From positions 1 to 64,000 of the forward strand of contig OZ251253.1 in the NCBI GenBank assembly GCA_965240325.2: a DNA stretch of 64,000 bases, read 5' to 3'. The position numbers and the translations under genes were made by a program. How positions within the stretch are numbered: position 1 is the first letter of the stretch; each line of letters begins with the position of its first letter. The notes below the pieces were generated by a model. It worked only from the letters and a program-made list of their open reading frames with translations. It ran no database searches and was not told the origin of the DNA. Source of the DNA: Rebecca billardiae RCC1528 (taxonomy: Eukaryota; Protista; Haptophyta). Positions 31,916 through 64,000 of this stretch are shown in pieces.

Positions 31916-32251
31916 ATAACCGAGGTCACCTGGGGACACCCCGTGAGGGGCTGTAGTCCTTCCGCCCAGCCCCAGTCTACCGACGGATTTGTTGACGAGG
32001 TTGTTCCTTATTCCCCGCCCGGTCTGTCCCGGGTGTATCCGCCCTGCGTGCTCGTCTGCGCTGTGTGGCTTCGTAGAGGCTCCGGCTTCTGTGTGTGTGT
32101 AGGCGGTGAGCCTTTTCTGCGGCTGTGGCTTTCTTGAGGCTCATTGTGTCATCGTTTGTTGACCCGGGGGTGACTGTACCCGGGGGCTGCGCTTCTTGTG
32201 GAGCCGTGCTCGTCTTCAGTCGGCAAACGGGTTTTCTACCGCGGTTTGTCA
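31814..32251. mobile_element. Possible MITE or foldback element with TG...CA termini
   Basis: A third copy of the arm, TCAGTCGGCAAACGGGTTTTCTACC(GC)GGTTTGTCA, lies at 32216-32251. It is inverted relative to 31814-31847 and direct relative to 31878-31914. No clear target-site duplication. Confidence 0.45.
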
Positions 32252-33561: not shown

Positions 33562-36500
33562 TCAGGCCTGCGTCGTGTCGGCGGGGCTGTCGCGCGCGCG
33601 CCGCCGCGCGCCGGGCGTGACCGGCGCGCCGGCGCGCAGTCGGCGCGCCGGGCCGCTGCGCATCGACACGCCCGCCGCGTGGCGCAGCGCGATGGCGAGC
33701 GGCTCGCCGAGCACGAGCGCGAGCAGCGCGCCGATCCCCCACGCCGCCTCGACGGCGCGCGTCTGCGGCGCGCCAAACGCCGCGCCGAGGAGCGCGGCGG
33801 CGACGAGCAGCGCCGCCTCGAACGCGAGCGCGAGCGCCCACGCGAGCCCGGCGCGCACGCGCGCGGCGCGCTCGCTCGCAACGCTCGGCGGCGCGCGGCG
33901 CGCCCCGCGGCGCAGCTCGACGGTCTGGCGGAGCGCGAAGGAGGAGAGCAGCTCGGGCGCGCTCACCAGGCCGTCGCCGTCCAGGTCGATCTCGCGCATC
34001 AGCGCGCGCACCTCGGTGGGCGCGAGCGGGTCGCCGAGCTCGGCGGCGAGCAGCGCGAGGCCGGGCGCGTCGAGCAGCGCGCCGCGCCACCGCGCGTACG
34101 CGGTCGGCGAGGCCGGCGCGGGCGCAAACATGGCGTGCGCGGCGCGCAGCACGTGCGTCTCGCGCGGGCTGAGGCTCGCCAGCGCGCGCACGGACGCCGC
34201 GTCGAGCGCCACCTCGTACACGCCGGGCGCGAACGGGAGGCGCAGCTGGAAGGCGGGCGCGGGCGCGCCGCCGACGCCGCCGTCCGCCTCGTCGCCGCCG
34301 CCGGCCGCGTCCGCGGCCGGCGGCGGCTCGTCCCGGGGCGCGCGCGGGCGCGGGACGGGCACGGCGCGGTCGCGGCCGGCGGGCACGCCGAGCAGCGGCT
34401 GCGCGGCGGCGGCCGGCGGCGGCGGCGGCAGCGGCGGCGGCGGCAGCGGCTTGGGCGGCGGCACGGGCGCGGGCGCCTCGCTGCCGTCGACGAGCCGCGC
34501 GGGCGTCGGCGCGCCGCCCGCGGGCAGTGGCGGCAGCCGCGAGCGGCACGCGGCCGAGGACGTGACGCTCCCGCGCGGCGGCGTGGGCTGCGCGGCGGCG
34601 GGCGCGGCGGCGGGCGCGGCGGCGGGCGTGGGCCGCGCCGTCCGCGCGAGCGTCGCCGCGCTGATCGGCTTGCACGCCGCCTTCCTCATCGGCGCGCCCT
34701 GCGACTTGTCCTGCACCGCCGCCGCCGCGGCGGCCGCGGCCGCGGCCTCGGCGGCGGCGATGGCCGACGCGGACGTCTGCTCCGCTCCGCGCGCCGCGGC
34801 GGGCTCGGGCGGCGGCGGCGCCGTCGCCGGCGCGGCGGCGGCGGGCGCCGCGCGCGGCGGCGGCGCTGCGGCCGCTGCGGCCGCGTGCGCGCGCGACGCG
34901 CCAGCGCCCGCGTCGGCCGGTCGCGGCGCGTGCGCGTGCGCGGTCTCGGCGTGGGCCGCATCGGCGTCAGCGGCGCGCGGCGCCGGCGCCGGGGCTGGCG
35001 TCGGCGCGGGAGCCGGCGGCGTCGGCTCGGGCGCAGGCTTGGGCTTGGGCTTGGGCTCGGGCTCGGGCTCGCGCGGCGCGTCCGGCGTGGCGGGCACGGC
35101 GGCGGCGGCGGGCGCGGGCGTGCACGCGGCCTGGTCCGGCGGCCGCGGCGGCGCGGCGCCGGCCTGCGCGCCCTGCGCCGCCGGTGCGGCCGGCGGCGCG
35201 GGCTGCGGCTGCGGGTGCGCGGGCCTGGGCTGCGCCGTCTTTGCGAGCGCCGCGGCAGAGATGGGCTTGCACGCGGCCTTCTTCGGCGCGCCGGCGGCGG
35301 CGGCGGCCTGGCTCGCGCTGAGCGAGGGCGCGCGCCGCGCGCCCACCGCGCCCGAGCGCGTCGAGGAGGCCTGCGAGCCCGCGCGGCCGGCGCGCGAGGG
35401 CCCGCGCTGCGAGGGCTGCTTGGTGGGCGCGTACGCCGAGGCCGCCATCGCCATCGAGCTCTGCGGCTGCCCCGGCGCGCGCGAGCCCGGCGGCTTGGAG
35501 GGCGTGCGGCCGAGCGGCGCCGCGCTGCCCGCGACCGACGGCGCGCGGCTCGGCGGCTTGCTCGGCGCGGGCGAGGCCGACGCCGAGGTCCAGCCGTCGC
35601 GCAGCGGCGTGACGGCGCCGCTCGGCGTCGCGGACGGCGGCGGCAGCCGCGTCGTGCGCGCCGCGCGCCGCGGCACCTCGTCCGCTTCGCCCGCTTCGCC
35701 GCCGCCCCTGGAGGGCGCGCGCGCGAGCGCGGGCGCGACCGCGCGGTCGGCTGCGCGCTGCGCAGAGCCCGCGCCGCCGACGGCGGCGGTGCCCGGCCGT
35801 GCGAGCGGGGCGGCGGCCGGGCGCGGCGCGAGCACGGCCACGGGCGGCGCGCCGCCCGCGCCCGGCGGCGGCAGCCGCCCGGCGGTGCGCGGCCGCAGGT
35901 CGGCCGGCGGCGGCACGCGCTGCGAGACGCGCAGCTGCTGCCGCGGCTGCGACTGCTGCGACGCGGAGGCGGAGGGCGCGCGCGCGGCCGCGGGGCGGTC
36001 GCCGCCGCTCGCCGCGGACGGCGGCAGAGGCTCGGCGGGCGGCGAGCGCGGCGGCGAGGGCGGCGGCGAGGGCGGCGGCGGCGCGAGGCGCGCGAGCGGG
36101 CTCGCGAGCGGCTCGCGCGCCGCCGGCGCGAGCGCGGCAAGCCCAAGCCGCAGCGGCGGCGGCGGCGAGCTGACGGGCGAGCTGCGCGACGAGCTGGGCG
36201 AGCTCAGCGTCGCGCTGCGCCGCGGCGCGCTGCGCCCGTCGCGCGCCCGCGGCGACGGCTCGTCCGACGGGCTGCCGCTGCCGCTGCCGCTGCAGCCGGC
36301 CGACGGCACGCGGCCGGCGCCGCGCGTGGCGGCGAGGTGGATGCGCAGGCTCGGCTGGCACGGCGCGGGGGGCGAGGGCGGCGGCGGCCGCGGCGAGGGC
36401 TGCGCCGCGCCGCGCGGCTGGTCGAGCGGGTCAGCGAGCTCTGGCGAGCGGCGCAGCACGACCTCGGCGCCGCGGCGCGCGCTCTGCTGCAGCGAGCCAA

Positions 36501-37771
36501 ACAGCGCCCCGCCGGTCGGCGAGCGCGCGCGCGCCGTGCGCCCGAGCAGGCTGGCGAGAGCGTTCTGCAGCGAGCGCGCGCCGTCGGCGCCGTGCGAATC
36601 GACCGAGCCGACCGAGCTGCGCGCGGAGCGGACCCGCGGCGAGCGCGACCGCCGCGAGGCGCGGCGCGGCGGCTCGGCGACCGGGAGCGCTCCGCGCGAG
36701 AGCCTGGCGGCGGCGCTCTGCGGCCGGCGCGCGAGCTGGTCCAAGGCGCCCGCCGCGGGCTGCACCGCCTGGCACGGCGCGACAATGTTGCCCGTCGTGA
36801 CGAGCCCGCCGCGCGTGAAGCTCGCCGACGACGGCCGCTCGGGCAGCGTGTACGCGGCGAGGTCGGCGGCGCGCGTGCGCACGGGCCGCACGCGGTCGGC
36901 GCCGGCGGCGGGAGACACGCTCGGCGGCGGCGGCGGCGCGAGCGCGGGCGCGGGCCCCGGCGGCTCGCGCCACGACGCGCCCGCGCCCGCCGAGGACGGC
37001 GAGGACGGGCCGGCCGACGGCGTCGCGAGCGCCGCGCGCTGCGCGGGCGAGGGCGGCGCCTTGGCCGCGGAGAGGCCGCCGGGCGACGGCAGCGGCCGGC
37101 GGCGGCTCGGCGAGCGGCTCGGCGAGGGCCCCGCCGCGCCTGCCGCGCCCGTTGGCGGCGCCTTGGGAGCCTGCGGCGCGCTGCCGCGCGCGAGCGCGGC
37201 GACGCGCTCGGTGACGTGCTCGAGCTCGTCCAGCGCGCCGCGCGCGAGCGCGCCCAGCCGGTCGAAGAGGCGCGCGTGCGGCGGCGCGCGCGTGCGCCCG
37301 TACGCCACGCGCCACAGCACGCGCATGCCGCCGAGCGCGAGGCTGCCCGCGACGCCGAGCAGCGCGCCGAGCGCGGCGATCGCGCCGAGCGGCGCCGGCC
37401 CGTCGGCGGGCGCCGGCGCGAGCACGTCGGCGCCGAGCGCGCACGCCAGCGCGAGCTGCAGCGCGAGCGTCTCGAAGAGCGTCTGCACCGCCTCGGCCGC
37501 GCGCGGGCTCGCCGTCGGCGCGGTCGCGAGGAGCGGCGCGAGCGCGTGCTCGTCGAGCACGCGCACCCACGCGTCCTCCAGCCCCGCGCGCGCGCGCCCG
37601 GCCCGCGTGGTCGGCACCGGCCGCGGCGTGCGCAGGCCGCCCGAGCGCCACGGCGCCGCCGTGCTGCGCGCCGGCTCGACCATGGCACCCGCCTCCGGCT
37701 CGATGCGCGTGCGCCGGAAGGCGACGGCGGGCGGCGCCTTCTTCGACCGCGGGCGCGCGCGCGCGCCGGGC

Positions 37772-37812
<41 letters not shown>

Positions 37813-40800
37813 TGGCGCGCCCTGCGTCGGCGGCGGCAGGCGCGGGAACGTGCGGAGCAGCGGCCGCGTCTTGTCGAAGACCGACGGGCTCGGCGCCTCG
37901 CGCGGCGTGGCGGCGAGCTGCGCGGCCGCCTCGCGCTCCGAGTGCTGCCACGCGCGGTACCGGCGCACCGTGCGCTTGTCGGCCAGCCACGCGCCGCCGA
38001 GCGCGAGCGCCTGCACGGCCGCGAGCAGCACGACGAGCGCCGCGATGCTCGAGAGCGCGGCGGCCGCCGTCTCCGCGAGCTGCACGCTCGCGCCGTGCTC
38101 GCCCGCCGCCGGCCCGCCCTCGCCCGCACCCGCGTCGTCGTCGCCGTCGCCGCCGCCGCCGCCGCCGTCGCCGTCGCCGGGCGCGCCGCCGCCGCCCTCG
38201 TCCGCGTACACGGGCACGCGGATGCCCGCAAAGTCGGTCAGGTGCGTGCACAGGCAGTACAGCAGCGAGGGGTCGAGCCCGCGCGGGGTGGCGACCGTGT
38301 CGCACCCGCTCTGCGTCCACACGCGCGCCGCCTCGTCGTAGTGGTGGCAGAGCGTCTCGTACCCGACGACGACGGCCGCCGGCTCGGGCTCGGGCTCGGC
38401 CTGCGCCTGCTGCCGCAGCGCGCGCCGGCCGAGGCGCGCGGCGGCGGCGGCCGCGGCCTCGGTGCTGCGCGGCGGGATGCCGATGAGGAACGGCTCGGCG
38501 AGCTGCTCGACGCTGAGCTCGGCGCCGCCCACCTCGTACAGCGTGACGGTGAAGATGTTCGTCGCGAGCGACTCGACCGGGTCGGTGACTTCGTGCACCT
38601 CGCGCGCCACCGAGTAGAGGATCACGTCCACGCCCGACTCGGAGGCCGCCTCGGTGAGCGAGTCGACCACCGAGTCCGAGACGAGCAGCCCGCCGTACCC
38701 GTCGGTCGCCTCGATCCAGCCGCCGGAGAGCAGGCCCTCCACCGTCGCGCGCTGCGTCGTGATGTTGAACGCGCGGCCGCTCAGCGAGACCGCCGCCTCG
38801 CCGGGCACGGTGCCGATCAGCATCGCGGCCGCGAGGCCGACCGCCGCCGAGGTGGTCGAGGCGGAGAGCGCCGCGCCCGCGTCGCCGCTCAGCGCGGCGT
38901 CGTCCGCCGAGAGCACCGCGTCGATCGAGTCGAAGAGCGCGCGCGCCGTGCCCGCGTCCAGGCCGGTGCCCGACGTCCGCGCGTCGTCCGCGAGCTGCGC
39001 GGCGAGCGAGAGGCCGGCCGCCTGCGTGGCGGCCGTGAGCGGGACGGGCGTGTTGAGCACGGACGAGAGCGCCTGCGCCGAGAGCGCGCGCGCCTCCGAC
39101 GTGCCGGGCGAGACGCCCGCCGCGTCCTCGGTGACGGCCATCAGCGCGCCCACGAGCGTCTCGACCGTCGCCGCGCCCGACGCGGACGACAGCGCCTCGT
39201 CCGCGTCGTACGAGACGAGCCACGCGAGCATGTCGACCAGCTGGTTGGCGGTGGTCGCGTCCGAGCGGTCGACCGCGGCGCGCGCCTGCGTGAGCAGGTC
39301 GCTCAGCGCCTGCGTGACGTTGATGGTGCGCGGCGGCGCCTCGACCTCGACCGGCGCCGCCGCGCTCGCGAGCCCGCCGCTCGCGTCCGCCGCCGTCACC
39401 GTCGCGGTGCGGTTGCCCGCGGGCAGCGACGCCTCGAAGGCGGGCGACCAGCGCGGGCCGCCGAGGAAGCCGCCGGACGCGACGGCGGTGATCCCGCGCG
39501 CGCCGCTCGAGAGCGCGTGCGAGAACGAGTAGAGCAGCGGCAGGTCGTCGGCGTCGTCCGTCCAGCCGGCGGTGAGCAGCGTGAAGCGCGTCTCCAGCGC
39601 CGCGCCGCGCGCGGGCGAGACGCTCAGCGTGCCGCCGAATGGCGGGCGGTTCATCAGCACGACGATGGAGGAGACGGCGGACGCGTTGTTCACGCCGGGG
39701 CTCACCGTCAGCTCGAACGCGTACCGCGCGCCCGCGGAGAGCACGTCGCGGAAGAAGGCGAGGCTGGGCCCGGCGTCGCCCGTCGTCGTGACCGCCGCCG
39801 TGTCGTTGAGCGCGAGCCCCGCGTCGACCGCGCCGCCGCCGCCGGGCAGCACGAGCAGCGCGCGCCAGCGGTACGAGTAGCTGACCGCGCCGCTCGCGGC
39901 GAGCGCCGCCGACGCGGCGTCCAGGCTCGTGTCGATCACGAGCCGCCGCTCGGGCGTGCGCCACGACGGGTTGTACTTGTCGAGCGCGAGCGAGGCGAAC
40001 GTGATGACCGGCAGCGCGTCCGCCACGACCTCGAGCGCGACCTGGGCGCTGTCCGCGCCAGGCACGCCGGGCTTGGAGACGGTGACGCGCAGCGTGTACG
40101 TGCCCGGCGCGAGCGAGAGCGGCGGCAGCGCAAACGTCGAGCCGTTCGCGCGCGCGGTCGCGTCGAGCAGCGCGGCGGTGCCGTCGGGCGTGAGCGCGGA
40201 CACGGCGCTCGGCCACTCCCACGAGAAGCGCAGCCCCGCCGCGCCGTCCGCGACGTTGGGGTCGACCGAGGCGGACGCGTCGACGGCGAGCGCGTCGAGC
40301 GCAGAGACGCGCCTGTCGCCGCCGGCGATCACCGCGCGCACGGGCTGCTGCTCGACGACCACCGACACGGCCGCCTCGGTGCTCGCGCTCGGGTCGGCCG
40401 CCATCCACGCGCGCACGCGGAAGTGGTACGTGCGCAGCGGCAGCACCGAGAAGCGCGGCAGCAGCCACGAGGCGAGCGTCTCGCCCGCGCGCAGCGCGAG
40501 CGGGACCGACGCGTTGTCGTCGCTCACGTCCGCGCCGGAGGCGCTCAGCGTCACGCGCTCGACGCTCCACCGGAAGGCCATCAGCCGGCCGACGCCGCGC
40601 GGCCAGCACGGCGAGAGCTGCGCGAGGCCGGCGTCGGCCGCGAGCAGCAGCGGGCGGTCGGCGGTGGTGCTGCGCACCGCCGGCCCGTCGATCGAGATGC
40701 TCGGGCTCGCCACGCCCGCGCGCTCGATGCGCACGGACGCGAGCTCAGACGTGAGCCCGAGGAAGGAGGTCACGCGCAGCACAAAGACGTAGCCGAGCGC

Positions 40801-43800
40801 GATGTTGTCGCTGAGCGCGTCGAGGGCGAGGACGGGCGTGGAGAGGGGCAGCTGCGCGAGCTGCGCGTTGAGCGCGCCCGCGTCGTCCGAGCGCGACGGG
40901 TCGAGGCGCCACTCGTACTCGAGCGGCACGATGCCCGCGCCGCTCGAGCCGCTGCCGTCGAGCCGCACGCGCTCGCCCGAGCACACGGAGAGCTGGCGCG
41001 GGCCGCTGATCTGCGCGACGGGCGTCGGGCAGCCCGCGGCGCCGCACGGGTCGTCGCCGCTGATCACCACCGACGCCGCGGCGTTGCGCTCGGCGGGCGA
41101 GCAGCGCGACGGCTGCGCGGCGCAGGCGGCGGGCCGCAGCACAGCCGCGCGCACGCCCACCGCCGAGCCAGGCCGCACGGCCGTCGTGGCGCTGAGCTGC
41201 GCGACGAGCGTCGACTCGTCCTGCCAGTAGCACAGCGGCGCGACGCCGCCGGCCGCCGCGCCGCGCACGAGCGCCACGGCCTCGTCGTCGAGCACCGCCG
41301 CGCACGCAGAGAGCGACTCGCCCATGCCCGCGCGGTCCGTGGGCTGCGCGTCGAACTCGAGCAGCAGCCGCGTCGCGCTCGCGTCAAAGCGCGCGCGCTC
41401 GAGCACCGGCGCGTGCAGCCCGGTGAGCTCGAAGAGCACGGCGCTCGGCCCGCCCGGCGCCGCGGGCGCGAACTGCTGCCCGTTGAGCGCCACGCGGAGC
41501 TCCACGGCGCCCTCGGGCCCGTACGTGGCGAGCTGCTCGATCGACTCCGCGGCGAGGCCGGCCGGTGGGCCAGACGCGACCACGTCGCCAAACGCCACGC
41601 GCGCGAGCGCGTCTAGACCGGACGGCACGAGCGCGTCGAAGCCCACGCCGGCGATTGTCGTGCGCGTGCCAGCGACGCCGCTCGCGGGGCTCACCGACGT
41701 CACGCTCGGCTCGACGTAGTACACAAACGGCAGGCCGTCGGAGGTGGTCGAGCCGGCGATGCCGCCACCGAGCGACAGCTCGAGCGCGAGCGCGGCCGCG
41801 CCGCCGCCAGGCGCGCGCGGCAGCGTGCAGCGCGCGCGCGTGCTGCCGTCCGGCGCGGCTGGCAGCAGCGTCGCGTTGGCCGCGCAGTCGGCGCCGAGCG
41901 CGGGGAGCACGCAGCAGAGCATGCCCGCGCCGTGGTCGGCGAACCCGACGCCCTGAAGCGTCACGACCGTGCCGCCGCCCACCGGCCCTGCCGGCGGGTG
42001 CAGCGCGTGCACGGCCAGCGACGACACGTCGTACAGCTCAAAGGCGAGAGCGCCGAACAGCGCGGGCACGGGCGTCGGGCTGTTGGCCAGCCAGAGCGAG
42101 ACGGCGTACGAGCCCAGCCCAAGGCCAGGCGGCACGGGGCACTCGGCACGCGAGCCGCTCAGCACGCTGGCCGCCGACCTGAGCACGGCGCCACTCGCGT
42201 CCTCGAAGGCGCACTCCTCGCCACCGCGGGCGTCCACAAAGCCGGAGCCGTGCAGCGTGAGCGCTGGCTGCAGCCCTTCCACGAGCGGCGCGCCGGACGG
42301 CGAGAGGCCGAGCAGCACGGCGAGGTACGAGGGCGGCGGCGGCGGCGAGGGCGGCGGCGGCGGCGGCGCGCTGGGCGGCGGCGCGGGCGGCATGTGCGCG
42401 CGCGGCACGGCGAGCACGACGACGCCCAGCCGCGCAGAGAGCGCCTCGAGGCTCGGCGAGGCCGCCTCGGCGGAGCCGGGCGTGAGCGCAGCCACCAGCT
42501 CCACTGGCGGCGCCTCGACGTCGCCGCCGCCGCCGTCGCTGGAGGCAGGCGTGGTGAGCTTGAGCACGACGCCGAGGCCGTCCGCGCGCGGCGCGGCGCC
42601 GTCGATGCTCAGCCGGCCCGCGTCCACGCCGAGCTCGACAGCAAGCGCCGCGATGAGAGCCTCCGTGCGCGCGCCGTCGAGCTCGTGTGCGCCCAGCTCG
42701 AGCACGAGCAGCGCGTACTGCTCGGTCGAGAAGTCGGGCGGCGGCGAGGGCGGCGCGGGCGGCGGCGACGGGCTCGGAGGGGGCGAAGGCGGGGCTGGCG
42801 GCGGCAAAGGCGGCACGTGGTTGTACGGCAGCGCGCGCACGGGCACGCCCAGCGCGGCCGAGAGCTCAGCCAGGCTCGCGGGCGACGTCGGCGTCGCGCC
42901 CGGGGTGAAGGCAGCGGTGGGGTCCACTGCGGACTCGCCAGCGGATGGATCCGTCGTGACACGGAAAACAACGCGCAGCAGGCCGTCGCCCGCATGGACG
43001 CGCTCGACGCTCACGCGCGACGCGTCCACGCCGAGCTCGGCCGCCACGCGCGACACCGTCTGCGCCGTCACCGCGGCGAACGCGACGGGCGTCATGTCGA
43101 GCTGCAGCACGACGTACTCCTCGCGGTCGAAGCTCGGCGGGGGCGAGGGCGACGGCGGCTGGGGCGGCGGCGACGGCGGCACGTGCCGATGCGGCGCGTC
43201 GACCACCAGCACGCCCAGCGCGCGAGAGAGCGCCTCGAGGTCGGCGGGCGACGACGCGCTCGCGCCGGGCGTGAGCACAGCCACCGCGTCGACCGCGCGC
43301 TCGCCCGCGCCGCCGTCCGTGCTGAGCGTGAACACCACGTCCAGCAGCCCGTCGTCCGTGGTCGTCACAGAGCCCACGGCCAGCCGCTCCACGCCCACGC
43401 CCAGCGCGTCGGCGAGCGAGGCGAGCACGAAGCTGCTCGCGCCGTCAAACTCGGCGGCCGTCACGTTCAGCGTGAGCGCCACGTACTGCGTGCCCGCGGA
43501 CGCGTCGGGCGGCGGGCTCGGCGGCGAGGGCGGGCGCGGAGGCGGCGACGGCGCCGCGGGCGGTGCGGGTGGCGGCGAGGACGGGCGCGGCGGCGAGGGC
43601 GGCGGCGACGGCGGCGCGTGCGCACGGGGCGCGCTGGCCACTGGCACGCCCAGCAGCGCCGACAGCTCGGCCAGGCTCGCCGGAGACTCGGCCGTCGCGC
43701 CCGGCGTGAGCGCGCCCACCGGGTCGGCGACGGGCACCTCGTCGAGCAGCGGCGCCGTCGTCACGCGCACCACCACGTCGAGCAGCCCACCCTCGCCGCT

Positions 43801-52800: not shown

Positions 52801-55800
52801 GCCCAGCGCGTCGGCGAGCGAGGCGAGCAGGAAGCTGCTCGCGCCGTCAAACTCGGCGGCCGTCACGTTCAGCGTGAGCGCCACGTACTGCGTGCCCGCG
52901 GACGCGTCGGGCGGCGGACTCGGCGGCGAGGGCGGGCGCGGAGGCGGCGACGGTGCCGATGGCGGTGCGGGTGGCGGCGACGACGGGCGCGGCGGCGAGG
53001 GTGGCGGCGACGGCGGCGCGTGCGCCCGGGGCACGCTGGCCACGGGCACGCCCAGCAGCGCCGACAGCTCGGCCAGGCTCGCCGGAGACTCGGACGTCGC
53101 GCCCGGCGTGAGCGAGCCCACCGGGTCGGGGACGGGCACCTCGTCGAGCAGCGGCCCCGTCGTCACGCGGATCACCACGTCGAGCAGCCCGCCCTCGCCG
53201 CTCGACACCGAGTCGATCACCACGCGGTCCGGGTCGACGCCCAGCTGCGCCGCGAGCGCCTCGCGCACCGCGTCGCTCGACGCTGCAAACGCGGCCGCGC
53301 TCGCGTCCACGCTCAGCGCGATGTACTGGTTGGTGCCAAAGTCGGGCGGCGGCGAGGGCGGCGAGGGCGGCGCCGAGGGCGGCATAAAGCCGCGCGGCAC
53401 CGAGAGCACGGGCGTGCCGAGGAGGCTCGACAGCTCCGCGAGGGTGCCCGGCGACTCGTCGGTCGCGCCCGGCGCGAGAACGGACAGCGCGTCCACTGCG
53501 AGCTCGCCCGCCGCGGCGTCGGTCGTCACCTTGATCACCACCTCGAGCCCGCCACCGTCCACGCCGCGGGTCGACTCCACACTCACGCGGTCGACGCTCA
53601 CGCCCAGCTGCGCAGCGATCGCCGCGAGCGTCGACGCCGCCGTCGCGTCGAACGCCTCCGCGCTCGTGTCGAGCACGAGGGCCACGTACTGCTCGGCCGA
53701 GAAGTCGGGCGGCGGATGTGGCGGCGGCGACGGCGGCGGCGGCGGCGTGGGCGGCGAGGGCGGCGGCGAGGGCGGCGACGAGGGCGGCACGTGGTTGAAC
53801 GGCTGCGCGCGCACGGGCACGCCCAACGCGGCCGAGAGCTCAGCCAGGCTGGTTGGCGACGTCGGTGTCGCGCCCGGCGCGAGCGCAGCGGCAGGGTCCA
53901 CCGGCGTCTCGCCCGCGGCCGCGTCCGTCGTCACCTTGAACACCACGCTCAGCAGCCCGCCTTCGCTCCGAACCTGCTCGACGCTCACGCGAGACGCGTC
54001 CACGCCGAGCTCGGCCGCCACGCGCGACATAGTCTGCGCCGTCACCGCCGCGAACGCGACGGGCGTCATGTCGAGCTGCAGCACGACGTACTCCTCGCGG
54101 TCGAAGCTCGGCGGGGGCGAGGGCGAGGGCGGCAGCGGCGGCGGCGACGGCGGCACGTGCCGATGCGGCGCGTCGACCACCAGCACGCCCAGCGCGCGAG
54201 AGAGCGCCTCGAGGTCGGCGGGCGACGACGCGCTCGCGCCGGGCGTGAGCACAGCCACAGCGTCGACCGCGCGCTCGCCCGCGCCGCTGTCCGTGCTGAG
54301 CGTGAACACCACGTCCAGCAGCCCGTCGTCCGTGGTCGTCACAGCGCCCACGGTCAGCCGCTCCACGCCCACGCCCAGCGCGTCGGCGAGCGAGGCGAGC
54401 ACGAAGCTGCTCGCGCCGTCAAACTCGGCGGCCGTCACGTTCAGCGTGAGCGCCACGTACTGCGTGCCCGCGGACGCGTCGGGCGGCGGGCTCGGCGGCG
54501 AGGGCGGGAGCGGAGGCGGTGACGGCGCAGCAGGCGGTGCGGGTGGCGGCGAAGACGGGCGCGGCGGCGAGGGTGGCGGCGACGGCGGCGCGTGCGCCCG
54601 GGGCGCGCTGCCCACGGGCACGCCGAGCAGCGCCGACAGCTCGGCCAGGCTCGCCGGAGACTCGGCCGTCGCGCCCGGCGTGAGCAAGCCCACCGGGTCG
54701 GCGACGGGCACCTCGTCGAGCAGCGGCGCCGTCGTCACGCGGACCACCACGTCGAGCAGCCCGCCCTCGCCGCTCGACACCGAGTCGATCACCACGCGGT
54801 CCGGGTCGACGCCCAGCTGCGCCGCGAGCGCCTCGCGCACCGCGTCGCTCGACGCTGCAAACGCGGCCGCGCTCGCGTCCACGCTCAGCGCGATGTACTG
54901 GTTGGTGCCAAAGTCGGGCGGCGGCGAGGGCGGCGAGGGCGGCGCCGAGGGCGGCATAAAGCCGCGCGGCACCGAGAGCACGGGCGTGCCGAGGAGGCTC
55001 GACAGCTCCGCGAGGGTGCCCGGCGACTCGTCAGTCGCGCCCGGCGCGAGAACGGACAGCGCGTCCACTGCGAGCTCGCCCGCCACGGCGTCGGTCGTCA
55101 CCTTGATCACCACCTCGAGCCCGCCACCGTCCACGCCGCGGGTTGACTCCACACTCACGCGGTCGACGCTCACGCCCAGCTGCGCAGCGATCGCCGCCAG
55201 CGTCGACGCCGCCGTCGCGTCGAACGCCTCCGCGCTCGTGTCGAGCACGAGGGCCACGTACTGCGCGACCGAGAAGTCGGGCGGCGGATGTGGCGGCGGC
55301 GACGGCGGCGGCGGCGGGGTGGGCGGCGAGGGCGGCGGCGAAGGCGGCGACGAGGGCGGCACGTGGTTGAACGGCTGCGCGCGCACGGGCACGCCCAGCG
55401 CGGCCGAGAGCTCAGCCAGGCTGGTTGGCGACGTCGGTGTCGCGCCCGGCGCGAGCGCAGCGGCAGGGTCCACCGGCGTCTCGCCCGCGGCCGCGTCCGT
55501 CGTCACCTTGAACACCACGCTCAGCAGCCCGCCCTCGCTCCGCACCTGCTCGACGCTCACGCGAGACGCGTCCACGCCGAGCTCGGCCGCCACGCGCGAC
55601 ACCGTCTGCGCCGTCACCGCGGCGAACGCGACGGGCGTCATGTCGAGCTGCAGCACGACGTACTCCTCGCGGTCGAAGCTCGGCGGGGGCGACGGCGACG
55701 GCGGCTGAGGCGGCGGCGACGGCGGCACGTGCCGATGCGGCGCGTCGACCACCAGCACGCCCAGCGCGCGAGAGAGCGCCTCGAGGTCGGCGGGCGACGA

Positions 55801-58800
55801 CGCGCTCGCGCCGGGCGTGAGCACAGCCACAGCGTCGACCGCGCGCTCGCCCGCGCCGCCGTCCGTGCTGAGCGTGAACACCACGTCCAGCAGCCCGTCG
55901 TCCGTGGTCATCACAGAGCCCACGGTCAGCCGCTCCACGCCCACGCCCAGCGCGTCGGCGAGCGAGGCGAGCACGAAGCTGCTCGCGCCGTCAAACTCGG
56001 CGGCCGTCACGTTCAGCGTGAGCGCCACGTACTGCGTGCCCGCGGACGCGTCGGGCGGCGGGCTCGGCGGCGAGGGCGGGCGCGGAGGCGGCGACGGCGC
56101 CGATGGCGGTGCGGGTGGCGGCGAAGACGGGCGTGGCGGCGAAGGCGGCGGCGAGGGCGGCGCGTGCGCCCGGGGCGCGCTGGCCACGGGCAATCCCAGC
56201 AGCGCCGACAGCTCGGCCAGGCTCGCCGGAGACTCGGCCGTCGCGCCCGGCGTGAGCAAGCCCACCGGGTCGGCGACGGGCACCTCGTCGAGCAGCGGCG
56301 CCGTCGTCACGCGGACCACCACGTCGAGCAGCCCGCCCTCGCCGCTCGACACCGAGTCGATCACCACGCGATCAGCGTCGACGCCCAGCTGCGCCGCGAG
56401 CGCCTCGCGCACCGCGTCGCTCGACGCTGCAAACGCGGCCGCGCTCGCGTCCACGCTCAGCGCGATGTACTGGTTGGTGCCAAAGTCGGGCGGCGGCGAG
56501 GGCGGCGAGGGCGGCGCCGAGGGCGGCATAAAGCCGCGCGGCACCGAGAGCACGGGCGTGCCGAGGAGGCTCGACAGCTCCGCGAGGGTGCCCGGCGACT
56601 CGTCAGTCGCGCCCGGCGCGAGAACGGACAGCGCGTCCACTGCGAGCTCGCCCGCCACAGCGTCGGTCGTCACCTTGATCACCACCTCGAGCCCGCCACC
56701 GTCCACGCCGCGGGTCGATTCGACACTCACGCGGTCGACGCTCACGCCAAGCTGCGCAGCGATCGCCACGAGCGTCGACGCCGCCGTTGCACCAAATGCG
56801 TCCGCGCTCGTGTCGAGCACGAGGGCCACGTACTGCGCGACCGAGAAGTCGGGCGGCGGATGTGGCGGCGGCGACGGCGGCGGCGGCGGCGTGGGCGGCG
56901 AGGGCGGCGGCGAAGGCGGCGACGAGGGCGGCACGTGGTTGAACGGCTGCGCGCGCACGGGCACGCCCAGCGCGGCCGAGAGCTCAGCCAGGCTGGTTGG
57001 CGACGTCGGTGTCGCGCCCGGCGCGAGCGCAGCGGCAGGGTCCACCGGCGTCTCGCCCGCGGCCGCGTCCGTCGTCACCTTGAACACCACGCTCAGCAGC
57101 CCGCCCTCGCTCCGAACCTGCTCGACGCTCACGCGAGACGCGTCCACGCCGAGCTCGGCCGCCACGCGCGACACAGTCTGCGCCGTCACCGCCGCGAACG
57201 CGACGGGCGTCATGTCGAGCTGCAGCACGACGTACTCCTCGCGGTCGAAGCTCGGCGGGGGCGAGGGCGACGGCGGCAGCGGCGGCGGCGACGGCGGCAC
57301 GTGCCGATGTGGCGCGTCGACCACCAGCACGCCCAGCGCGCGAGAGAGCGCCTCGAGGTCGGCGGGCGACGACGCGCTCGCGCCGGGCGTGAGCACAGCC
57401 ACAGCGTCGACTGCGCGCTCGCCCGCGCCGCCGTCCGTGCTGAGCGTGAACACCACGTCCAGCAGCCCGTCGTCCGTGGTCGTCACAGAGCCCACGGTCA
57501 GCCGCTCCACGCCCACGCCCAGCGCGTCGGCGAGCGAGGCGAGCAGGAAGCTGCTCGCGCCGTCAAACTCGGCGGCCGTCACGTTCAGCGTGAGCGCCAC
57601 GTACTGCGTGCCCGCGGACGCGTCGGGCGGCGGGCTCGGCGGCGAGGGCGGGCGCGGAGGCGGCGACGGCGCCGATGGCGGTGCGGGTGGCGGCGACGAC
57701 GGGCGCGGCGGCGAGGGTGGCGGCGACGGCGGCGCGTGCGCCCGGGGCACGCTGCCCACGGGCACGCCCAGCAGCGCCGACAGCTCGGCCAGGCTCGCCG
57801 GAGACTCGGACGTCGCGCCCGGCGTGAGCAAGCCCACCGGGTCGGCGACGGGCACCTCGTCGAGCAGCGGCGCCGTCGTCACGCGGATCACCACGTCGAG
57901 CAGCCCGCCCTCGCCGCTCGACACCGAGTCGATCACCACGCGGTCCGGATCGACGCCCAACTGCGCCGCGAGCGCCTCGCGCACCGCGTCGCTCGACGCT
58001 GCAAACGCGGCCGCGCTCGCGTCCACGCTCAGCGCGATGTACTGGTTGGTGCCAAAGTCGGGCGGCGGCGAGGGCGGCGAGGGCGGCGCCGAGGGCGGCA
58101 TAAAGCCGCGCGGCACCGAGAGCACGGGCGTGCCGAGGAGGCTCGACAGCTCCGCGAGGGTGCCCGGCGACTCGTCAGTCGCGCCCGGCGCGAGAACGGA
58201 CAGCGCGTCCACTGCGAGCTCGCCCGCCACGGCGTCGGTCGTCACCTTGATCACCACCTCGAGCCCGCCACCGTCCACGCCGCGGGTTGACTCCACACTC
58301 ACGCGGTCGACGCTCACGCCCAGCTGCGCAGCGATCGCCGCCAGCGTCGACGCCGCCGTCGCGTCGAACGCCTCCGCGCTCGTGTCGAGCACGAGGGCCA
58401 CGTACTGCTCGGCCGAGAAGTCGGGCGGCGGATGTGGCGGCGGCGACGGCGGCGGCGGCGGCGTGGGCGGCGAGGGCGGCGGCGAGGGCGGCGACGAGGG
58501 CGGCACGTGGTTGAACGGCTGCGCGCGCACGGGCACGCCCAGCGCGGCCGAGAGCTCAGCCAGGCTGGTTGGCGACGTCGGCGTCGCGCCCGGCGCGAGC
58601 GCGGCGGCAGGGTCCACCGGCGCCTCGCCCGCGGCCGCGTCCGTCGTCACCTTGAACACCACGCTCAGCAGCCCGCCCTCGCTCCGAACCTGCTCGACGC
58701 TCACGCGCGACGCGTCCACGCCGAGCGCGGCCGCCACGCGCGACACCGTCTGCGCCGTCACCGCGGCGAACGCGACGGGCGTCATGTCGAGCTGCAGCAC

Positions 58801-61204
58801 GACGTACTCCTCGCGGTCGAAGCTCGGCGGGGGCGAGGGCGACGGCGGCAGCGGCGGCGGCGACGGCGGCACGTGCCGATGCGGCGCGTCGACCACCAGC
58901 ACGCCCAGCGCGCGAGAGAGCGCCTCGAGGTCGGCGGGCGACGACGCGCTCGCGCCGGGCGTGAGCACAGCCACAGCGTCGACCGCGCGCTCGCCCGCGC
59001 CGCTGTCCGTGCTGAGCGTGAACACCACGTCCAGCAGCCCGTCGTCCGTGGTCGTCACAGCGCCCACGGCCAGCCGCTCCACGCCCACGCCCAGCGCATC
59101 GGCGAGCGAGGCGAGCACGAAGCTGCTCGCGCCGTCAAACTCGGCGGCCGTCACGTTCAGCGTGAGCGCCACGTACTGCGTGCCCGCGGACGCGTCGGGC
59201 GGCGGGCTCGGTGGCGAGGGCGGGCGCGGAGGCGGTGACGGCGCAGCAGGCGGTGCGGGTGGCGGCGAAGACGGGCGTGGCGGCGAAGGCGGCGGCGAGG
59301 GCGGCGCGTGCGCCCGGGGCGCGCTGGCCACGGGCAATCCCAGCAGCGCCGACAGCTCGGCCAGGCTCGCCGGAGACTCGGCCGTCGCGCCCGGCGTGAG
59401 CAAGCCCACCGGGTCGGCGACGGGCACCTCGTCGAGCAGCGGCGCCGTCGTCACGCGGACCACCACGTCGAGCAGCCCGCCCTCGCCGCTCGACACCGAG
59501 TCGATCACCACGCGATCAGCGTCGACGCCCAGCTGCGCCGCGAGCGCCTCGCGCACCGCGTCGCTCGACGCTGCAAACGCGGCCGCGCTCGCGTCCACGC
59601 TCAGCGCGATGTACTGGTTGGTGCCAAAGTCGGGCGGCGGCGAGGGCGGCGAGGGCGGCGCCGAGGGCGGCATGAAGCCGCGCGGCACCGAGAGCACGGG
59701 CGTGCCGAGGAGGCTCGACAGCTCCGCGAGGGTGCCCGGCGACTCGTCAGTCGCGCCCGGCGCGAGAACGGACAGCGCGTCCACTGCGAGCTCGCCCGCC
59801 ACAGCGTCGGTCGTCACCTTGATCACCACCTCGAGCCCGCCACCGTCCACGCCGCCGGTCGATTCGACACTCACGCGGTCGGCGCTCACGCCCAGCTGCG
59901 CAGCGATCGCCGCGAGCGTCGACGCCGCCGTCGCGTCGAACGCCTCCGCGCTCGTGTCGAGCACGAGGGCCACGTACTGCGCGACCGAGAAGTCGGGCGG
60001 CGGATGTGGCGGCGGCGACGGCGGCGGCGGCGGCGTGGGCGGCGAGGGCGGCGGCGAAGGCGGCGACGAAGGCGGCACGTGGTTGAACGGCTGCGCGCGC
60101 ACGGGCACGCCCAGCGCGGCCGAGAGCTCAGCCAGGCTCGCAGGCGACGTCGGCGTCACGCCCGGCGCGAGCGCAGCGGCAGGGTCCACCGGCGTCTCGC
60201 CAGCGGCCACGTCCGTCGTCACCTTGAACACCACGCTCAGCAGCCCGCCCTCGCTCCGCACCTGCTCGACGCTCACGCGAGACGCGTCCACGCCGAGCTC
60301 GGCCGCCACGCGCGACACCGTCTGCGCCGTCACCGCGGCGAACGCGACGGGCGTCATGTCGAGCTGCAGCACGACGTACTCCTCGCGGTCGAAGCTCGGC
60401 GGGGGCGACGGCGACGGCGGCAGCGGCGGCGGCGACGGCGGCACGTGCCGATGCGGCGCGTCGACCACCAGCACGCCCAGCGCGCGAGAGAGCGCCTCGA
60501 GGTCGGCGGGCGACGACGCGCTCGCGCCGGGCGTGAGCACAGCCACAGCGTCGACCGCGCGCTCGCCCGCGCCGCCGTCCGTGCTGAGCGTGAACACCAC
60601 GTCCAGCAGCCCGTCGTCCGTGGTCGTCACAGAGCCCACGGTCAGCCGCTCCACGCCCACGCCCAGCGCGTCGGCGAGCGAGGCGAGCAGGAAGCTGCTC
60701 GCGCCGTCAAACTCGGCGGCCGTCACGTTCAGCGTGAGCGCCACGTACTGCGTGCCCGCGGACGCGTCGGGCGGCGGGCTCGGCGGCGAGGGCGGGCGCG
60801 GAGGCGGCGACGGCGCCGATGGCGGTGCGGGTGGCGGCGAAGACGGGCGTGGCGGCGAAGGCGGCGGCGAAGGCGGCGCGTGCGCCCGGGGCGCGCTGCC
60901 CACGGGCACGCCCAGCAGCGCCGACAGCTCGGCCAGGCTCGCCGGAGACTCGGACGTCGCGCCCGGCGTGAGCAAGCCCACCGGGTCGGCGACGGGCACC
61001 TCGTCGAGCAGCGGCGCCGTCGTCACGCGGACCACCACGTCGAGCAGCCCGCCCTCGCCGCTCGACACCGAGTCGATCACCACGCGGTCCGGATCGACGC
61101 CCAGCTGCGCCGCGAGCGCCTCGCGCACCGCGTCGCTCGACGCTGCAAACGCGGCCGCGCTCGCCTCCACGCTCAGCGCGATGTACTGGTTGGTGCCAAA
61201 GTCG

Positions 61205-61235
<31 letters not shown>

Positions 61236-64000
61236 AGGGCGGCATGAAGCCGCGCGGCACCGAGAGCACGGGCGTGCCGAGGAGGCTCGACAGCTCCGCC
61301 AGGGTGCCCGGAGACTCGTCAGTCGCACCCGGCGCGAGAACGGACAGCGCGTCCACTGCGAGCTCGCCCGCCACGGCGTCGGTCGTCACCTTGATCACCA
61401 CCTCGAGCCCGCCACCGTCCACGCCGCCGGTCGATTCGACACTCACGCGGTCTGCGCTCACGCCCAGCTGCGCAGCGATCGCCGCGAGCGTCGACGCCGC
61501 CGTCGCGTCGAACGCGTCCGCGCTCGTGTCGAGCACGAGGGCCACGTACTGCGCGCGCGTGTAGTCTGGCGGTGGCTGCGGCGGCGCAGAGGGCGACGCG
61601 GGCGGCGACGAGGGCGGCACGTGGTTGAACGGCTGAGCGCGCACGGGCACGCCCAGCGCCGCGGACAGCTCGGCAAGGCTTGTGAACGAGCTCGCGGTCG
61701 CGCCAGGGGTGAGCATGGCGGCCACGTCAACACTCGGCTCACCCGCCGACTCAGCCGTCGTCACCTTCAGCACCACGCTGAGCAGACCGGCCTCACTCCG
61801 CACCTGCTCGACGCTCACGCGCGACGCGTCCACGCCGAGCTCGGCCGCCACGCGCGACACCGTCTGCGCAGAGACGGACGCGAACGCGACAGAGCTCATG
61901 TCGAGCCGCAGCGCGACGTACTGCTCGCTGTCGAAGCTCGGCGGGGGCGAGGGCGACGGCGGCAGCGGCGGCGGCGATGGCGGCACGTGCCGATGCGGCG
62001 CGTCGACCACCAGCACGCCCAGCGCGCGAGAGAGCGCCTCGAGGTCGGCGGGCGACGACGCGCTCGCGCCGGGCGTGAGCACAGCCACAGCGTCGACCGC
62101 GCGCTCGCCCGCGCCGCTGTCCGTGCTGAGCGTGAACACCACGTCCAGCAGCCCGTCGTCCGTGGTCGTCACAGAGCCCACGGCCAGCCGCTCCACGCCC
62201 ACGCCCAGCGCGTCGGCAAGCGAGGCGAGCACGAAGCTGCTCGCGCCGTCAAACTCGGCGGCCGTCACGTTCAGCGTGAGCGCCACGTACTGCGTGCCCG
62301 CGGACGCGTCGGGCGGCGGGCTCGGCGGCGAGGGCGGGAGCGGAGGCGGCCACGGCGCCGCGGGTGGTGCGGGTGGCGGCGAAGACGGGCGTGGCGGCGA
62401 GGGTGGCGGCGACGGCGGTGCGTGCGCCCGGGGCGCGCTGGCCGCGGGCAATCCCAGCAGCGCCGACAGCTCGGCCAGGCTCGCCGGAGACTCGGCCGTC
62501 GCGCCAGGCGTGAGCAAGCCCACCGGGTCGGCGACGGGCACCTCGTCGAGCAGCGGCGCCGTCGTCACGCGGACCACCACGTCGAGCAGCCCGCCCTCGC
62601 CGCTCGACACCGAGTCGATCACCACGCGGTCCGGGTCGACGCCCAGCTGCGCCGCGAGCGCCTCGCGCACCGCGTCGCTCGACGCTGCAAACGCGGCCGC
62701 GCTCGCGTCCACGCTCAGCGCGATGTACTGGTTGGTGCCAAAGTCGGGCGGCGGCGAGGGCGGCGAGGGCGGCGCCGAGGGCGGCATGAAGCCGCGCGGC
62801 ACCGAGAGCACGGGCGTGCCGAGGAGGCTCGACAGCTCCGCGAGGGTGCCCGGCGACTCGTCAGTCGCGCCCGGCGCGAGAACGGACAGCGCGTCCACTG
62901 CGAGCTCGCCCGCCACAGCGTCGGTCGTCACCTTGATCACCACCTCGAGCCCGCCACCGTCCACGCCGCGGGTCGATTCGACACTCACGCGGTCAACGCT
63001 CACGCCAAGCTGCGCAGCGATCGCCACGAGCGTCGACGCCGCCGTTGCACCAAATGCGTCCGCGCTCGTGTCGAGCACGAGGGCCACGTACTGCGCGACC
63101 GAGAAGTCGGGCGGCGGATGTGGCGGCGGCGACGGCGGCGGCGGCGGCGTGGGCGGCGAGGGCGGCGGCGAAGGCGGCGACGAGGGCGGCACGTGGTTGA
63201 ACGGCTGCGCGCGCACGGGCACGCCCAGCGCGGCCGAGAGCTCAGCCAGGCTGGTTGGCGACGTCGGCGTCGCGCCCGGCGCGAGCGCGGCGGCAGGGTC
63301 TACCGGCGTCTCGCCCGCGGCCGCGTCCGTCGTCACCTTGAACACCACGCTCAGCAGCCCGCCCTCGCTCCGCACCTGCTCGACGCTCACGCGCGACGCG
63401 TCCACGCCGAGCTCGGCCGCCACGCGCGACACCGTCTGCGCCGTCACCGCCGCGAATGCGACGGGCGTCATGTCGAGCTGCAGCACGACGTACTCCTCGC
63501 GGTCGAAGCTCGGCGGGGGCGAGGGCGACGGCGGCAGCGGCGGCGGCGACGGCGGCACGTGCCGGTGCGGCGCGTCGACCACCAGCACGCCCAGTGCGCG
63601 AGAGAGCGCCTCGAGGTCTGAGGGCGACGACGCGCTCGCGCCGGGCGTGAGCACAGCCACTGCGTCGACCGCGCGCTCGCCCGCGCCGCTGTCCGTGCTG
63701 AGCGTGAACACCACGTCCAGCAGCCCGTCGTCAGTTGTCGTCACAGAGCCCACGGCCAGCCGCTCCATGCCCACGCCCAGCGCGTCAGCGAGCGAGGCGA
63801 GCAGGAAGCTGCTCGCGCCGTCAAACTCGGCGGCCGTCACGTTCAGCGTGAGCGCCACGTACTGCGTGCCCGCGGACGCGTCGGGCGGCGGGCTCGGCGG
63901 CGAGGGCGGGCGCGGAGGCGGCGACGGCGCCGATGGCGGTGCGGGTGGCGGCGAAGACGGGCGTGGCGGCGAAGGCGGCGGCGAAGGCGGCGCGTGCGCC
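33562..64000 (-). CDS. Giant (>10,100 aa, 5'-partial) polycystin-1/PKD-REJ-like, GPS-containing cell-surface receptor
   Basis: One uninterrupted frame runs to the window edge. It contains a repetitive ectodomain, IPT/TIG-like segments (LHPPAGPVGGGTVVTLQGVGF; PSVTSVSPASGVAGTRTTIAGVGF), REJ-like segments (RAVIAGGDRRV..VDASASVDP; NRPPFGGTLSVSPARGAALETRFTLLTAGWTDDADDLPLLYSF), GPS CHHYDEAARVWTQSGC..CLCTHLTDFA (~38226-38349), about 5 TM helices, and the EF loop DLDGDGLVSAPE (~33952-33987). Confidence 0.92.
42370..64000 (-). repeat. Coding higher-order tandem repeat: a 1572-bp (524-aa) unit of four ~100-aa modules with Ser-Pro linkers; 13 full units plus one partial in the window
   Basis: The anchor G[TM]QYVALTLNV falls at 43483, 45025, 46597, 48169, 49741, 51313, 52885, 54457, 56029, 57601, 59173, 60745, 62287 and 63859. 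Spacing is 1572 bp, with two intervals of 1542 bp. Confidence 0.97.

What the first reader, a model, noticed from the sequence alone, without database searches (positions are those of the whole stretch)
33562..64000. Giant (~1 MDa or more) polycystin-1/adhesion-receptor-like protein with a beads-on-a-string ectodomain and a cytoplasmic EF-hand
Seen in sequence: more than 10,100 codons without a stop, continuing beyond the window. The order is at least 55 ~100-aa modules with SPPP linkers, IPT/TIG, REJ, GAIN/GPS with an intact C..W...C..CxCxHL|T autoproteolysis site, TM1, TM2-3, a long disordered loop with an EF-hand, then TM4-5. Established: REJ plus GPS defines PKD1-family receptors, and SP-rich tracts are hydroxyproline-glycosylation sites in algal and plant wall proteins. 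Inference: a cleaved, heavily glycosylated filament perhaps hundreds of nm long, tethered to a Ca2+-binding membrane fragment. This could be an undescribed mechanosensory or adhesion system (surface filaments or scales, haptonema, gamete recognition).
Basis: partly seen in the sequence, partly recalled or inferred. Interest (0 to 1): 0.85.

Follow-up and report, generated by a model that had tools for sequence, protein, structure and literature searches.

The report
Giant SEA-bead mucin on polycystin base
An alga (probably a pavlovophyte haptophyte) has one unbroken gene for a surface protein of more than 10,000 residues, probably about 21,000. It carries a chain of at least 55 mucin-type SEA beads on proline-rich spacers, anchored by the self-cleaving front half of a polycystin-1-like receptor with no ion-channel half; nobody has yet shown that it is made.

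Summary
Observation confirmed: one stop-free minus-strand frame of 10,145 codons (63999-33562), open at the window edge. The 55 unnamed modules are SEA-superfamily domains: the predicted fold's best matches are NUP54, CELSR1, PCDH15-MAD12, CDH23, Notch and MUC16 SEA domains. They form a strict A-B-C-D repeat of 1,572 bp with Ser-Pro linkers and lack the GSVVV self-cleavage motif. All 13 full units differ, under purifying selection (pN/pS 0.33) and with recombination, which argues against assembly duplication. TIG, PKD, REJ (E 2e-41), GAIN/GPS with HL|T, five TM helices and one canonical EF-hand follow. There is no PLAT domain and no channel half, so it is not a canonical PKD1. Two relatives share this channel-less base, and the module is in a Pavlova gyrans transcriptome. 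An unverified neighbouring-window note is in frame and implies about 21,100 aa with an N-terminal Ser-Pro3 rod. Best reading: a MUC16-like, sheddable, extensible glycocalyx filament on a calcium-sensing anchor. No RNA run was available. The scan had already noted this base, and a similar rod-and-knob gene, elsewhere in this genome. I found no paper on it. New variant of a known kind.

The parts
33562..63999 (-). Single stop-free ORF, 10,145 aa inside the window, 5' end beyond the window; probably continues to about 96,954 (about 21,130 aa) according to an unverified neighbouring-window note
   Evidence: frame arithmetic; note s1-346290
42328..63999 (-). Array of 55 SEA-superfamily (ferredoxin-fold) modules, types A-B-C-D in a 524-aa / 1,572-bp higher-order repeat, joined by Ser/Pro-rich linkers (1,508 residues, 57% Pro, 19% Ser); no Cys; acidic; module A carries an N-glycosylation sequon in all 14 copies; no GSVVV motif
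41416..42324 (-). IPT/TIG domains (two Pfam stretches; a third similar beta domain judged by eye)
40720..41028 (-). PKD/Ig-like domain (PKD_4, weak)
39235..40575 (-). REJ domain (Pfam PF02010, E 2.4e-41)
38215..39327 (-). GAIN domain: helical subdomain A matches GPR110/BAI3/ADGRL3 GAIN; GPS motif at 38218-38349; predicted cleavage HL|T before T8588 (codon 38236-38238)
37984..38067 (-). TM1; followed by a 142-aa basic, Pro-rich loop where polycystin-1 has PLAT (no PLAT here)
37321..37494 (-). TM2-TM3 hairpin, preceded by the E-H motif that lines up with the polycystin-1 pre-TM2 segment through relatives
34150..37302 (-). About 1,050-aa basic, Pro/Ala/Ser-rich, probably disordered cytoplasmic loop
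33934..34137 (-). Calmodulin-like EF-hand pair: first hand degenerate, second canonical (loop 33952-33987)
   Evidence: both hands intact in relative L001
33685..33846 (-). TM4-TM5 with the W...EPL motif of polycystin-1 TM5; 40-aa tail, then stop; no channel domain
1..2458 (+). Telomere (CCCTAA)n: the gene's 3' end lies 31 kb from the chromosome end

Best explanation
A genuine giant type-I-oriented, five-pass membrane glycoprotein: a transmembrane-mucin-like filament built on the front half of a polycystin-1-type receptor. SHOWN by sequence or predicted fold: an intact frame under purifying selection; 55 SEA-fold beads with Ser-Pro spacers; TIG-PKD-REJ-GAIN/GPS; five TMs; a cytoplasmic EF-hand; no PLAT, no channel. 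INFERRED: (1) the protein self-cleaves at HL|T and the >0.85 MDa ectodomain stays bound non-covalently, as in polycystin-1 and adhesion GPCRs. (2) The Ser-Pro linkers are hydroxyproline-O-glycosylated polyproline-II segments, about 0.47 um long inside the window. (3) The SEA beads do not self-cleave (no GSVVV). Because both ends of a ferredoxin fold lie side by side, they hang as knobs that can unzip under load and release about 2 um of hidden length. (4) Strong pull or shear therefore stretches the filament first and then strips it off at the GPS, shedding whatever is attached. The five-TM stub with its EF-hand loop links this to calcium-dependent trafficking or signalling through partners; it is not itself a channel. 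The main role is most likely a protective or adhesive surface coat, with sensing secondary.
For: ORF and codon bias. pN/pS 0.33, 79 vs 24/24 variable columns by codon position, only in-frame length changes. SEA fold: VIA Z 10.3 NUP54, 10.1 CELSR1, 9.6 PCDH15 MAD12, 8.3 CDH23, 7.1 MUC16. REJ/TIG/GPS; GAIN. Same base in L001 and L012. A Ser-Pro rod followed by the same modules in another organism, L002. The module is in a Pavlova gyrans transcriptome. MUC16 repeats are SEA plus a Pro/Ser/Thr linker (PMC10829539, 61). PCDH15 MAD12 unfolds under force (PMC7547225, 75). GPS biology (PMC9672506, 77).
Against: No RNA or peptide evidence for this gene. The signal peptide and start are outside the window. 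The module model is single-sequence (mean pLDDT 57; domains 60-80). GPS and EF-hand scores are below Pfam cut-offs. Homology of the TMs to polycystin-1 is weak by direct comparison (E 0.03-0.1) and rests on position and intermediate sequences. Mechanics and glycosylation are analogies only.
Confidence: 0.55

Rival explanations
1. Primarily a mechanosensory receptor: the filament is an antenna, and GPS release or strain activates a separate PKD2/TRP-type calcium channel or another effector through the five-TM stub, with the EF-hand as feedback (for example haptonema or flagellar contact sensing).
For: Intact GAIN/GPS; EF-hands conserved in L001; five-TM base conserved across lineages; polycystin-1 signals through its stalk (PMC9672506).
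Against: The TOP/channel half that the polycystin-1 stalk acts on, and that assembles with PKD2, is absent; no PLAT; no channel gene next to it; the first EF-hand is degenerate here.
Confidence: 0.2
2. A variable recognition protein (gamete or self recognition, or a decoy against viruses and grazers), placed near the telomere so that recombination changes its length and sequence.
For: Subtelomeric position (5, 6); recombination among units (47% four-gamete pairs); REJ-GPS proteins are gamete receptors in sea urchin and a candidate in Ectocarpus (PMC1934368, PMC4700764).
Against: The units are homogenised and under purifying selection (pN/pS 0.33), not diversified; no ligand-binding head is seen in the window or mentioned in the titles of the neighbouring notes.
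Confidence: 0.15
3. The gene is real but the array length is inflated by assembly (as happened with MUC16, 63 vs 19 repeats), or the gene is silent.
For: Near-identical 1.57-kb units are hard to assemble; MUC16 precedent (PMC10829539); no RNA run; no read spanning the array was seen.
Against: All 13 units are distinct (13-111 differences); differences are mostly at third codon positions; divergence rises with distance (rho 0.45). A public run holds near-identical array pieces, including the internal-unit linker variant, while unique parts are largely not recovered, as expected for a multi-copy array at low coverage.
Confidence: 0.1

Closest known systems
Polycystin-1 / PKDREJ / sea-urchin SpREJ family
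   Same: PKD/Ig, REJ, GAIN with GPS HL|T, then TM1, TM2-3, a long cytoplasmic loop and TM4-5 with W...EPL in register
   Different: No PLAT after TM1; no six-TM TRP-like half, TOP domain or coiled coil; EF-hand in the TM3-4 loop; ectodomain of at least 55 SEA modules
MUC16 (CA125) and other transmembrane mucins
   Same: Giant membrane-anchored chain of SEA domains separated by Pro/Ser-rich linkers; probably a stiff glycosylated N-terminal rod; sheddable
   Different: At least 55 (probably about 110) SEA units against 19 repeats in the revised MUC16 model; four-unit higher-order repeat; single exon; extensin-type Ser-Pro linkers; REJ-GAIN five-TM anchor rather than one TM. Convergent, with no sequence similarity to MUC16
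Adhesion GPCRs with SEA + GAIN (ADGRF1/GPR110, ADGRF5, ADGRG6, CELSR1)
   Same: SEA and GAIN in one ectodomain; GPS motif; structural matches
   Different: Five TMs, not 7TM; REJ present; SEA units lack GSVVV
Ectocarpus Esi0130_0068 (REJ-GPS, 6-7 predicted TM; PMC4700764)
   Same: Algal REJ-GPS multi-pass protein
   Different: 1,427 aa, no SEA array or EF-hand reported; not compared by sequence here
Algal and plant extensins / Ser-Pro HRGPs (e.g. Chlamydomonas agglutinins; from own knowledge)
   Same: Ser-Pro repeat linkers, likely hydroxyproline glycosylation
   Different: Interrupted by folded SEA domains and anchored by a five-TM receptor base

Membership tests
Polycystin-1 (PKD1) family | REJ domain | tested here: met
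   PF02010 E 2.4e-41; polycystin-1 proteins among homolog hits
Polycystin-1 (PKD1) family | GAIN domain with GPS motif and HL|T/S-x-F before TM1 | tested here: met
   Motif intact; PF01825 E 1.6e-3 (below cut-off); profile hits adhesion-GPCR GPS in PDB, E 0.002 (49); GAIN-A structural match to BAI3/GPR110
Polycystin-1 (PKD1) family | PLAT/LH2 domain after TM1 | tested here: not met
   No Pfam hit; 142-aa low-complexity loop instead; also absent in P0001 and L012
Polycystin-1 (PKD1) family | 11 TMs including the six-TM TRP-like channel half | tested here: not met
   Five TMs, stop 40 aa after TM5, no downstream channel exon seen; L001 also ends after TM5 (44)
Polycystin-1 (PKD1) family | TM2-5 homologous to the polycystin-1 N-terminal TM domain | tested here: inconclusive
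   Direct profile E 0.026 and 0.096; chain window-P0001 (E 0.002), P0001-L012 (6e-4), L012-PC1 (4e-3), each at the matching position (39, 92)
SEA domain superfamily | Extracellular ferredoxin-like beta-alpha-beta-beta-alpha-beta fold of about 100 aa | tested here: met
   AF2 topology; the top ten VIA rows are all SEA-type domains, Z 7.7-10.3 (24); no Pfam SEA hit
Autoproteolytic SEA (MUC1 type) | GSVVV/GSIVV motif in the beta2-beta3 hairpin | tested here: not met
   None in the ORF; hairpins read G-L-L/E-x-V-V. The single SEA of relative P0001 has GSIVV
Transmembrane mucins (MUC16 type) | Tandem SEA plus Pro/Ser/Thr-rich linkers in a membrane-anchored ectodomain | tested here: met
   PMC10829539 (architecture only, no homology)
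Transmembrane mucins (MUC16 type) | Dense O-glycosylation and surface localisation | not testable with these tools
   Needs glycoproteomics and imaging
Adhesion GPCR | 7TM secretin-like domain after GAIN | tested here: not met
   Five TMs with a 1,050-aa loop; no 7tm hit
EF-hand calcium-binding domain | 12-residue loop D1-x-D3-x-D5-G6-x-I/V8-x-x-x-E12 in a paired hand | tested here: inconclusive
   Second hand canonical, first degenerate; both canonical in L001; binding not tested

The most novel reading that the evidence does not exclude
A single-exon protein of about 21,000 aa (about 2 MDa, about 2 um at rest) with some 110 non-cleaving SEA knobs acting as a force-buffering chain, released at a GAIN fuse and read out by a channel-less, EF-hand-bearing five-TM module. 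It would be a transmembrane mucin evolved independently in algae, and evidence that the polycystin-1 front half works as a free-standing, widespread protist receptor class.
Probability: 0.3. Interest if true: 0.8.

Novelty: new variant of a known kind. Interest (0 to 1): 0.6.

Why it matters
It would be among the largest known membrane proteins and, as far as I found, the longest SEA array (MUC16 has 19 repeats in the revised model). It suggests that algae built a mucin-like glycocalyx filament independently, from extensin linkers and SEA domains. It is also a natural polycystin-1 front half without PLAT or channel, which makes it possible to test what REJ-GAIN-TM1-5 does on its own, an open question in polycystin biology. 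Such genes are invisible to normal annotation: no database protein covered it.

Tried and rejected
Pfam on modules: only ACT/HTH noise. Foldseek on the four-module model: generic ferredoxin folds; VIA resolved them as SEA-type. A downstream channel exon: rejected, the DNA after the stop is lower in GC and the next gene is PTOX on the other strand. Introns in the long loop: unlikely, GC3 0.96-0.98 in frame with no stops. MUC1-type SEA self-cleavage: motif absent. Homolog searches with GAIN-TM3 alone and with P0001's base found nothing new. A metagenome scan with one module found nothing. phmmer of the base against PDB gave only linker noise. Whether the four-unit periods here and in L002 share an origin: tree unresolved. 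The spliced relative L001 was read exon by exon, by reference; the joined model was not built. Pei and Grishin 2017 was not held. Ten literature searches found no description of such a protein. DNA beyond 64,000 could not be read.

Full report
Observation. The minus strand carries one frame of 10,145 codons from 63999 to the stop at 33562, with no start in the window. Shuffled DNA of the same composition gives at most 971 codons, and third-position GC is 0.90-1.00 throughout, against 0.55-0.81 at second positions. The window begins with a TTAGGG telomere (1-2458). High GC, an Atlas top hit in Haptophyta and a module relative from the Pavlova gyrans MMETSP1466 transcriptome point to a pavlovophyte haptophyte. 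The species was not determined.

The array. Residues 46-7224 hold 55 modules of 105-108 aa in strict order A-B-C-D (41-52% identical between types), a 524-aa / 1,572-bp higher-order repeat, joined by Ser/Pro linkers. All 13 complete units differ (13-111 nt). The two shorter units lack exactly 10 codons. pN/pS is 0.33. Among the 11 full-length units, variable columns are 79 at third positions against 24 and 24; divergence rises with distance (rho 0.45; pairs are not independent); and 47% of informative site pairs show four gametes. This is the pattern of a coding array under purifying selection and unequal crossing-over or conversion, not of one unit copied by an assembler. One public run of unknown kind holds array pieces at 98-100% identity, plus a contig whose variant letters match the internal units (9 of 9 in most), while the unique part is largely missing. 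That fits a multi-copy array at low coverage but gives no copy number.

What the modules are. Pfam has no name for them. AlphaFold2 without an alignment gives each the order beta-alpha-beta-beta-alpha-beta (mean pLDDT 57, higher in the domains). Against 48,161 solved chains the ten best rows are all SEA-type domains: NUP54 (Z 10.3), CELSR1 (10.1), PCDH15 MAD12 (9.6), CDH23 MAD28 (8.3), IA-2 and the dystrophin glycoprotein complex, followed by Notch2 and MUC16. PCDH15 MAD12 is also called SEA and unfolds under force (PMC7547225). The GSVVV motif that drives SEA self-cleavage (PMC6954182) is absent from all modules. Tandem SEA plus Pro/Ser/Thr linker is the MUC16 layout, which long reads revised from 63 to 19 repeats (PMC10829539). 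That is both the closest analogy and a warning about array counts. The same module family follows a Ser-Pro rod in an unrelated contig, L002, also with a period of four; whether the periods share an origin is unresolved.

The base. After the array come TIG (E 2.5e-9), PKD_4, REJ (2.4e-41) and GPS (1.6e-3). The GPS reads C..W...GC..CxCxHL|TDF; a profile with relative P0001 hits adhesion-GPCR GPS motifs in the PDB. The confident helical part of a second model matches GAIN subdomain A of BAI3 (rmsd 2.6 A over 134 columns, E 0.2) and of GPR110 (Z 10.8), among designed helical repeats, so this is support, not proof. Five hydrophobic segments follow. Where polycystin-1 has PLAT there is a 142-aa low-complexity loop. 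A basic loop of about 1,050 aa with an EF-hand pair, only the second hand canonical, separates TM3 from TM4. The frame ends 40 aa after TM5, and the next gene is an EF-hand/PTOX on the other strand. So there is no channel half. Direct similarity of the TMs to vertebrate polycystin-1 is weak but in register, and an intermediate chain through P0001 and L012 lands on the polycystin-1 pre-TM2 segment.

Relatives. P0001/L001 (36% identical over TIG-REJ-GAIN) has a Ser-Pro rod, one SEA with GSIVV, other repeats, the same base, two canonical EF-hands, TM4-5 and a stop. It was read exon by exon; the joined step was left out. L012 has LamG domains, REJ, GPS and five TMs without PLAT or channel hits. 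The channel-less base is therefore a conserved design. Earlier scan notes report many giant genes with this base in the same genome, with other heads, and a similar rod-and-knobs gene on another piece. These are unchecked AI notes and I use them as context only. One note describes a 34,954-nt frame starting at my 62001 (s1-346290). Its far end, 96,954, is in frame with this ORF, which would make 21,130 aa, with a rod of about 900 Ser-Pro3 units at the N-terminus and a hydroxyproline arabinosyltransferase gene upstream. I could not read that DNA.

Mechanism. Most likely (0.55) a surface filament. It would be cleaved at the GPS but held together, as for polycystin-1 (PMC9672506). Glycosylated polyproline-II linkers would give about 0.47 um within the window, and non-cleaving SEA knobs could release about 2 um when unfolded (that the termini of a ferredoxin fold lie side by side is general knowledge). 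The GAIN strand would act as the final release point, and the five-TM/EF-hand stub as a calcium-sensitive anchor. All functional steps are inferred. Rivals: a mechanosensor coupled to a separate channel (0.2), a variable recognition protein (0.15), an inflated or silent array (0.1).

Comparison and verdict. It works like a transmembrane mucin on the outside and like polycystin-1 or an adhesion GPCR at the cleavage site. It meets REJ and GAIN but fails PLAT and the 11-TM criterion, so it is polycystin-1-related rather than a canonical member; sea-urchin REJ proteins with 1-11 TMs show that the family tolerates loss of TMs (PMC1934368), and an algal REJ-GPS protein is known from Ectocarpus (PMC4700764). 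Ten literature searches found no SEA-array REJ-GAIN protein or this five-TM/EF-hand base. All parts are known domains, while the combination and scale appear undescribed: new variant of a known kind, interest 0.6, limited by the lack of expression evidence.

Noticed in passing
window:1-2458: Telomere array (CCCTAA)n of about 400 copies: the window is a chromosome end.
   Followed up: yes
window:10596-17173: Subtelomeric satellite, 186-bp unit, about 35 copies, 94% matches.
   Followed up: no
window:29573-31708 (+): EF-hand pair fused to an alternative-oxidase/PTOX domain; already noted by the scan (s1-352992).
   Followed up: partly
window:25643-27151 (+) and 27290-29281 (+): A WD40 propeller gene and a metallo-beta-lactamase-fold gene.
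   Followed up: no
window:31809-31915 and 32214-32249: Short related inverted and direct segments containing GTAGAAAAC/ACCGG motifs, resembling the ends of a small transposon or a hairpin element, between PTOX and the giant gene (seen).
   Followed up: no
window:3097-4284 (+): Lower-GC subtelomeric ORF of 395 aa with no Pfam hit; possibly from a mobile element.
   Followed up: no
L002:1-3183: Ser-Pro rod followed by tandem modules of the same SEA subfamily, without Ser-Pro linkers, also with a period of four; a frame change near 1210-1243.
   Followed up: partly
L012:1-10893: Over 3,600-aa protein from another eukaryote: three LamG domains, REJ, GPS, five TMs, no PLAT or channel; keeps the F-T-R-x-E-R motif of polycystin-1 TM2.
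   Followed up: partly
L003, L004, L008, L010, L011, L013: About 550-aa GAIN/GPS proteins with a single TM and a short tail in metagenome contigs of 46-48% GC; origin not determined.
   Followed up: no
window:61552-62292, 44290-45030 and 42328-43119: Unit 2, unit 13 and the last modules are the most divergent; units 2 and 13 share a 10-aa shorter B linker, suggesting an edge effect or an older, larger duplication period.
   Followed up: partly
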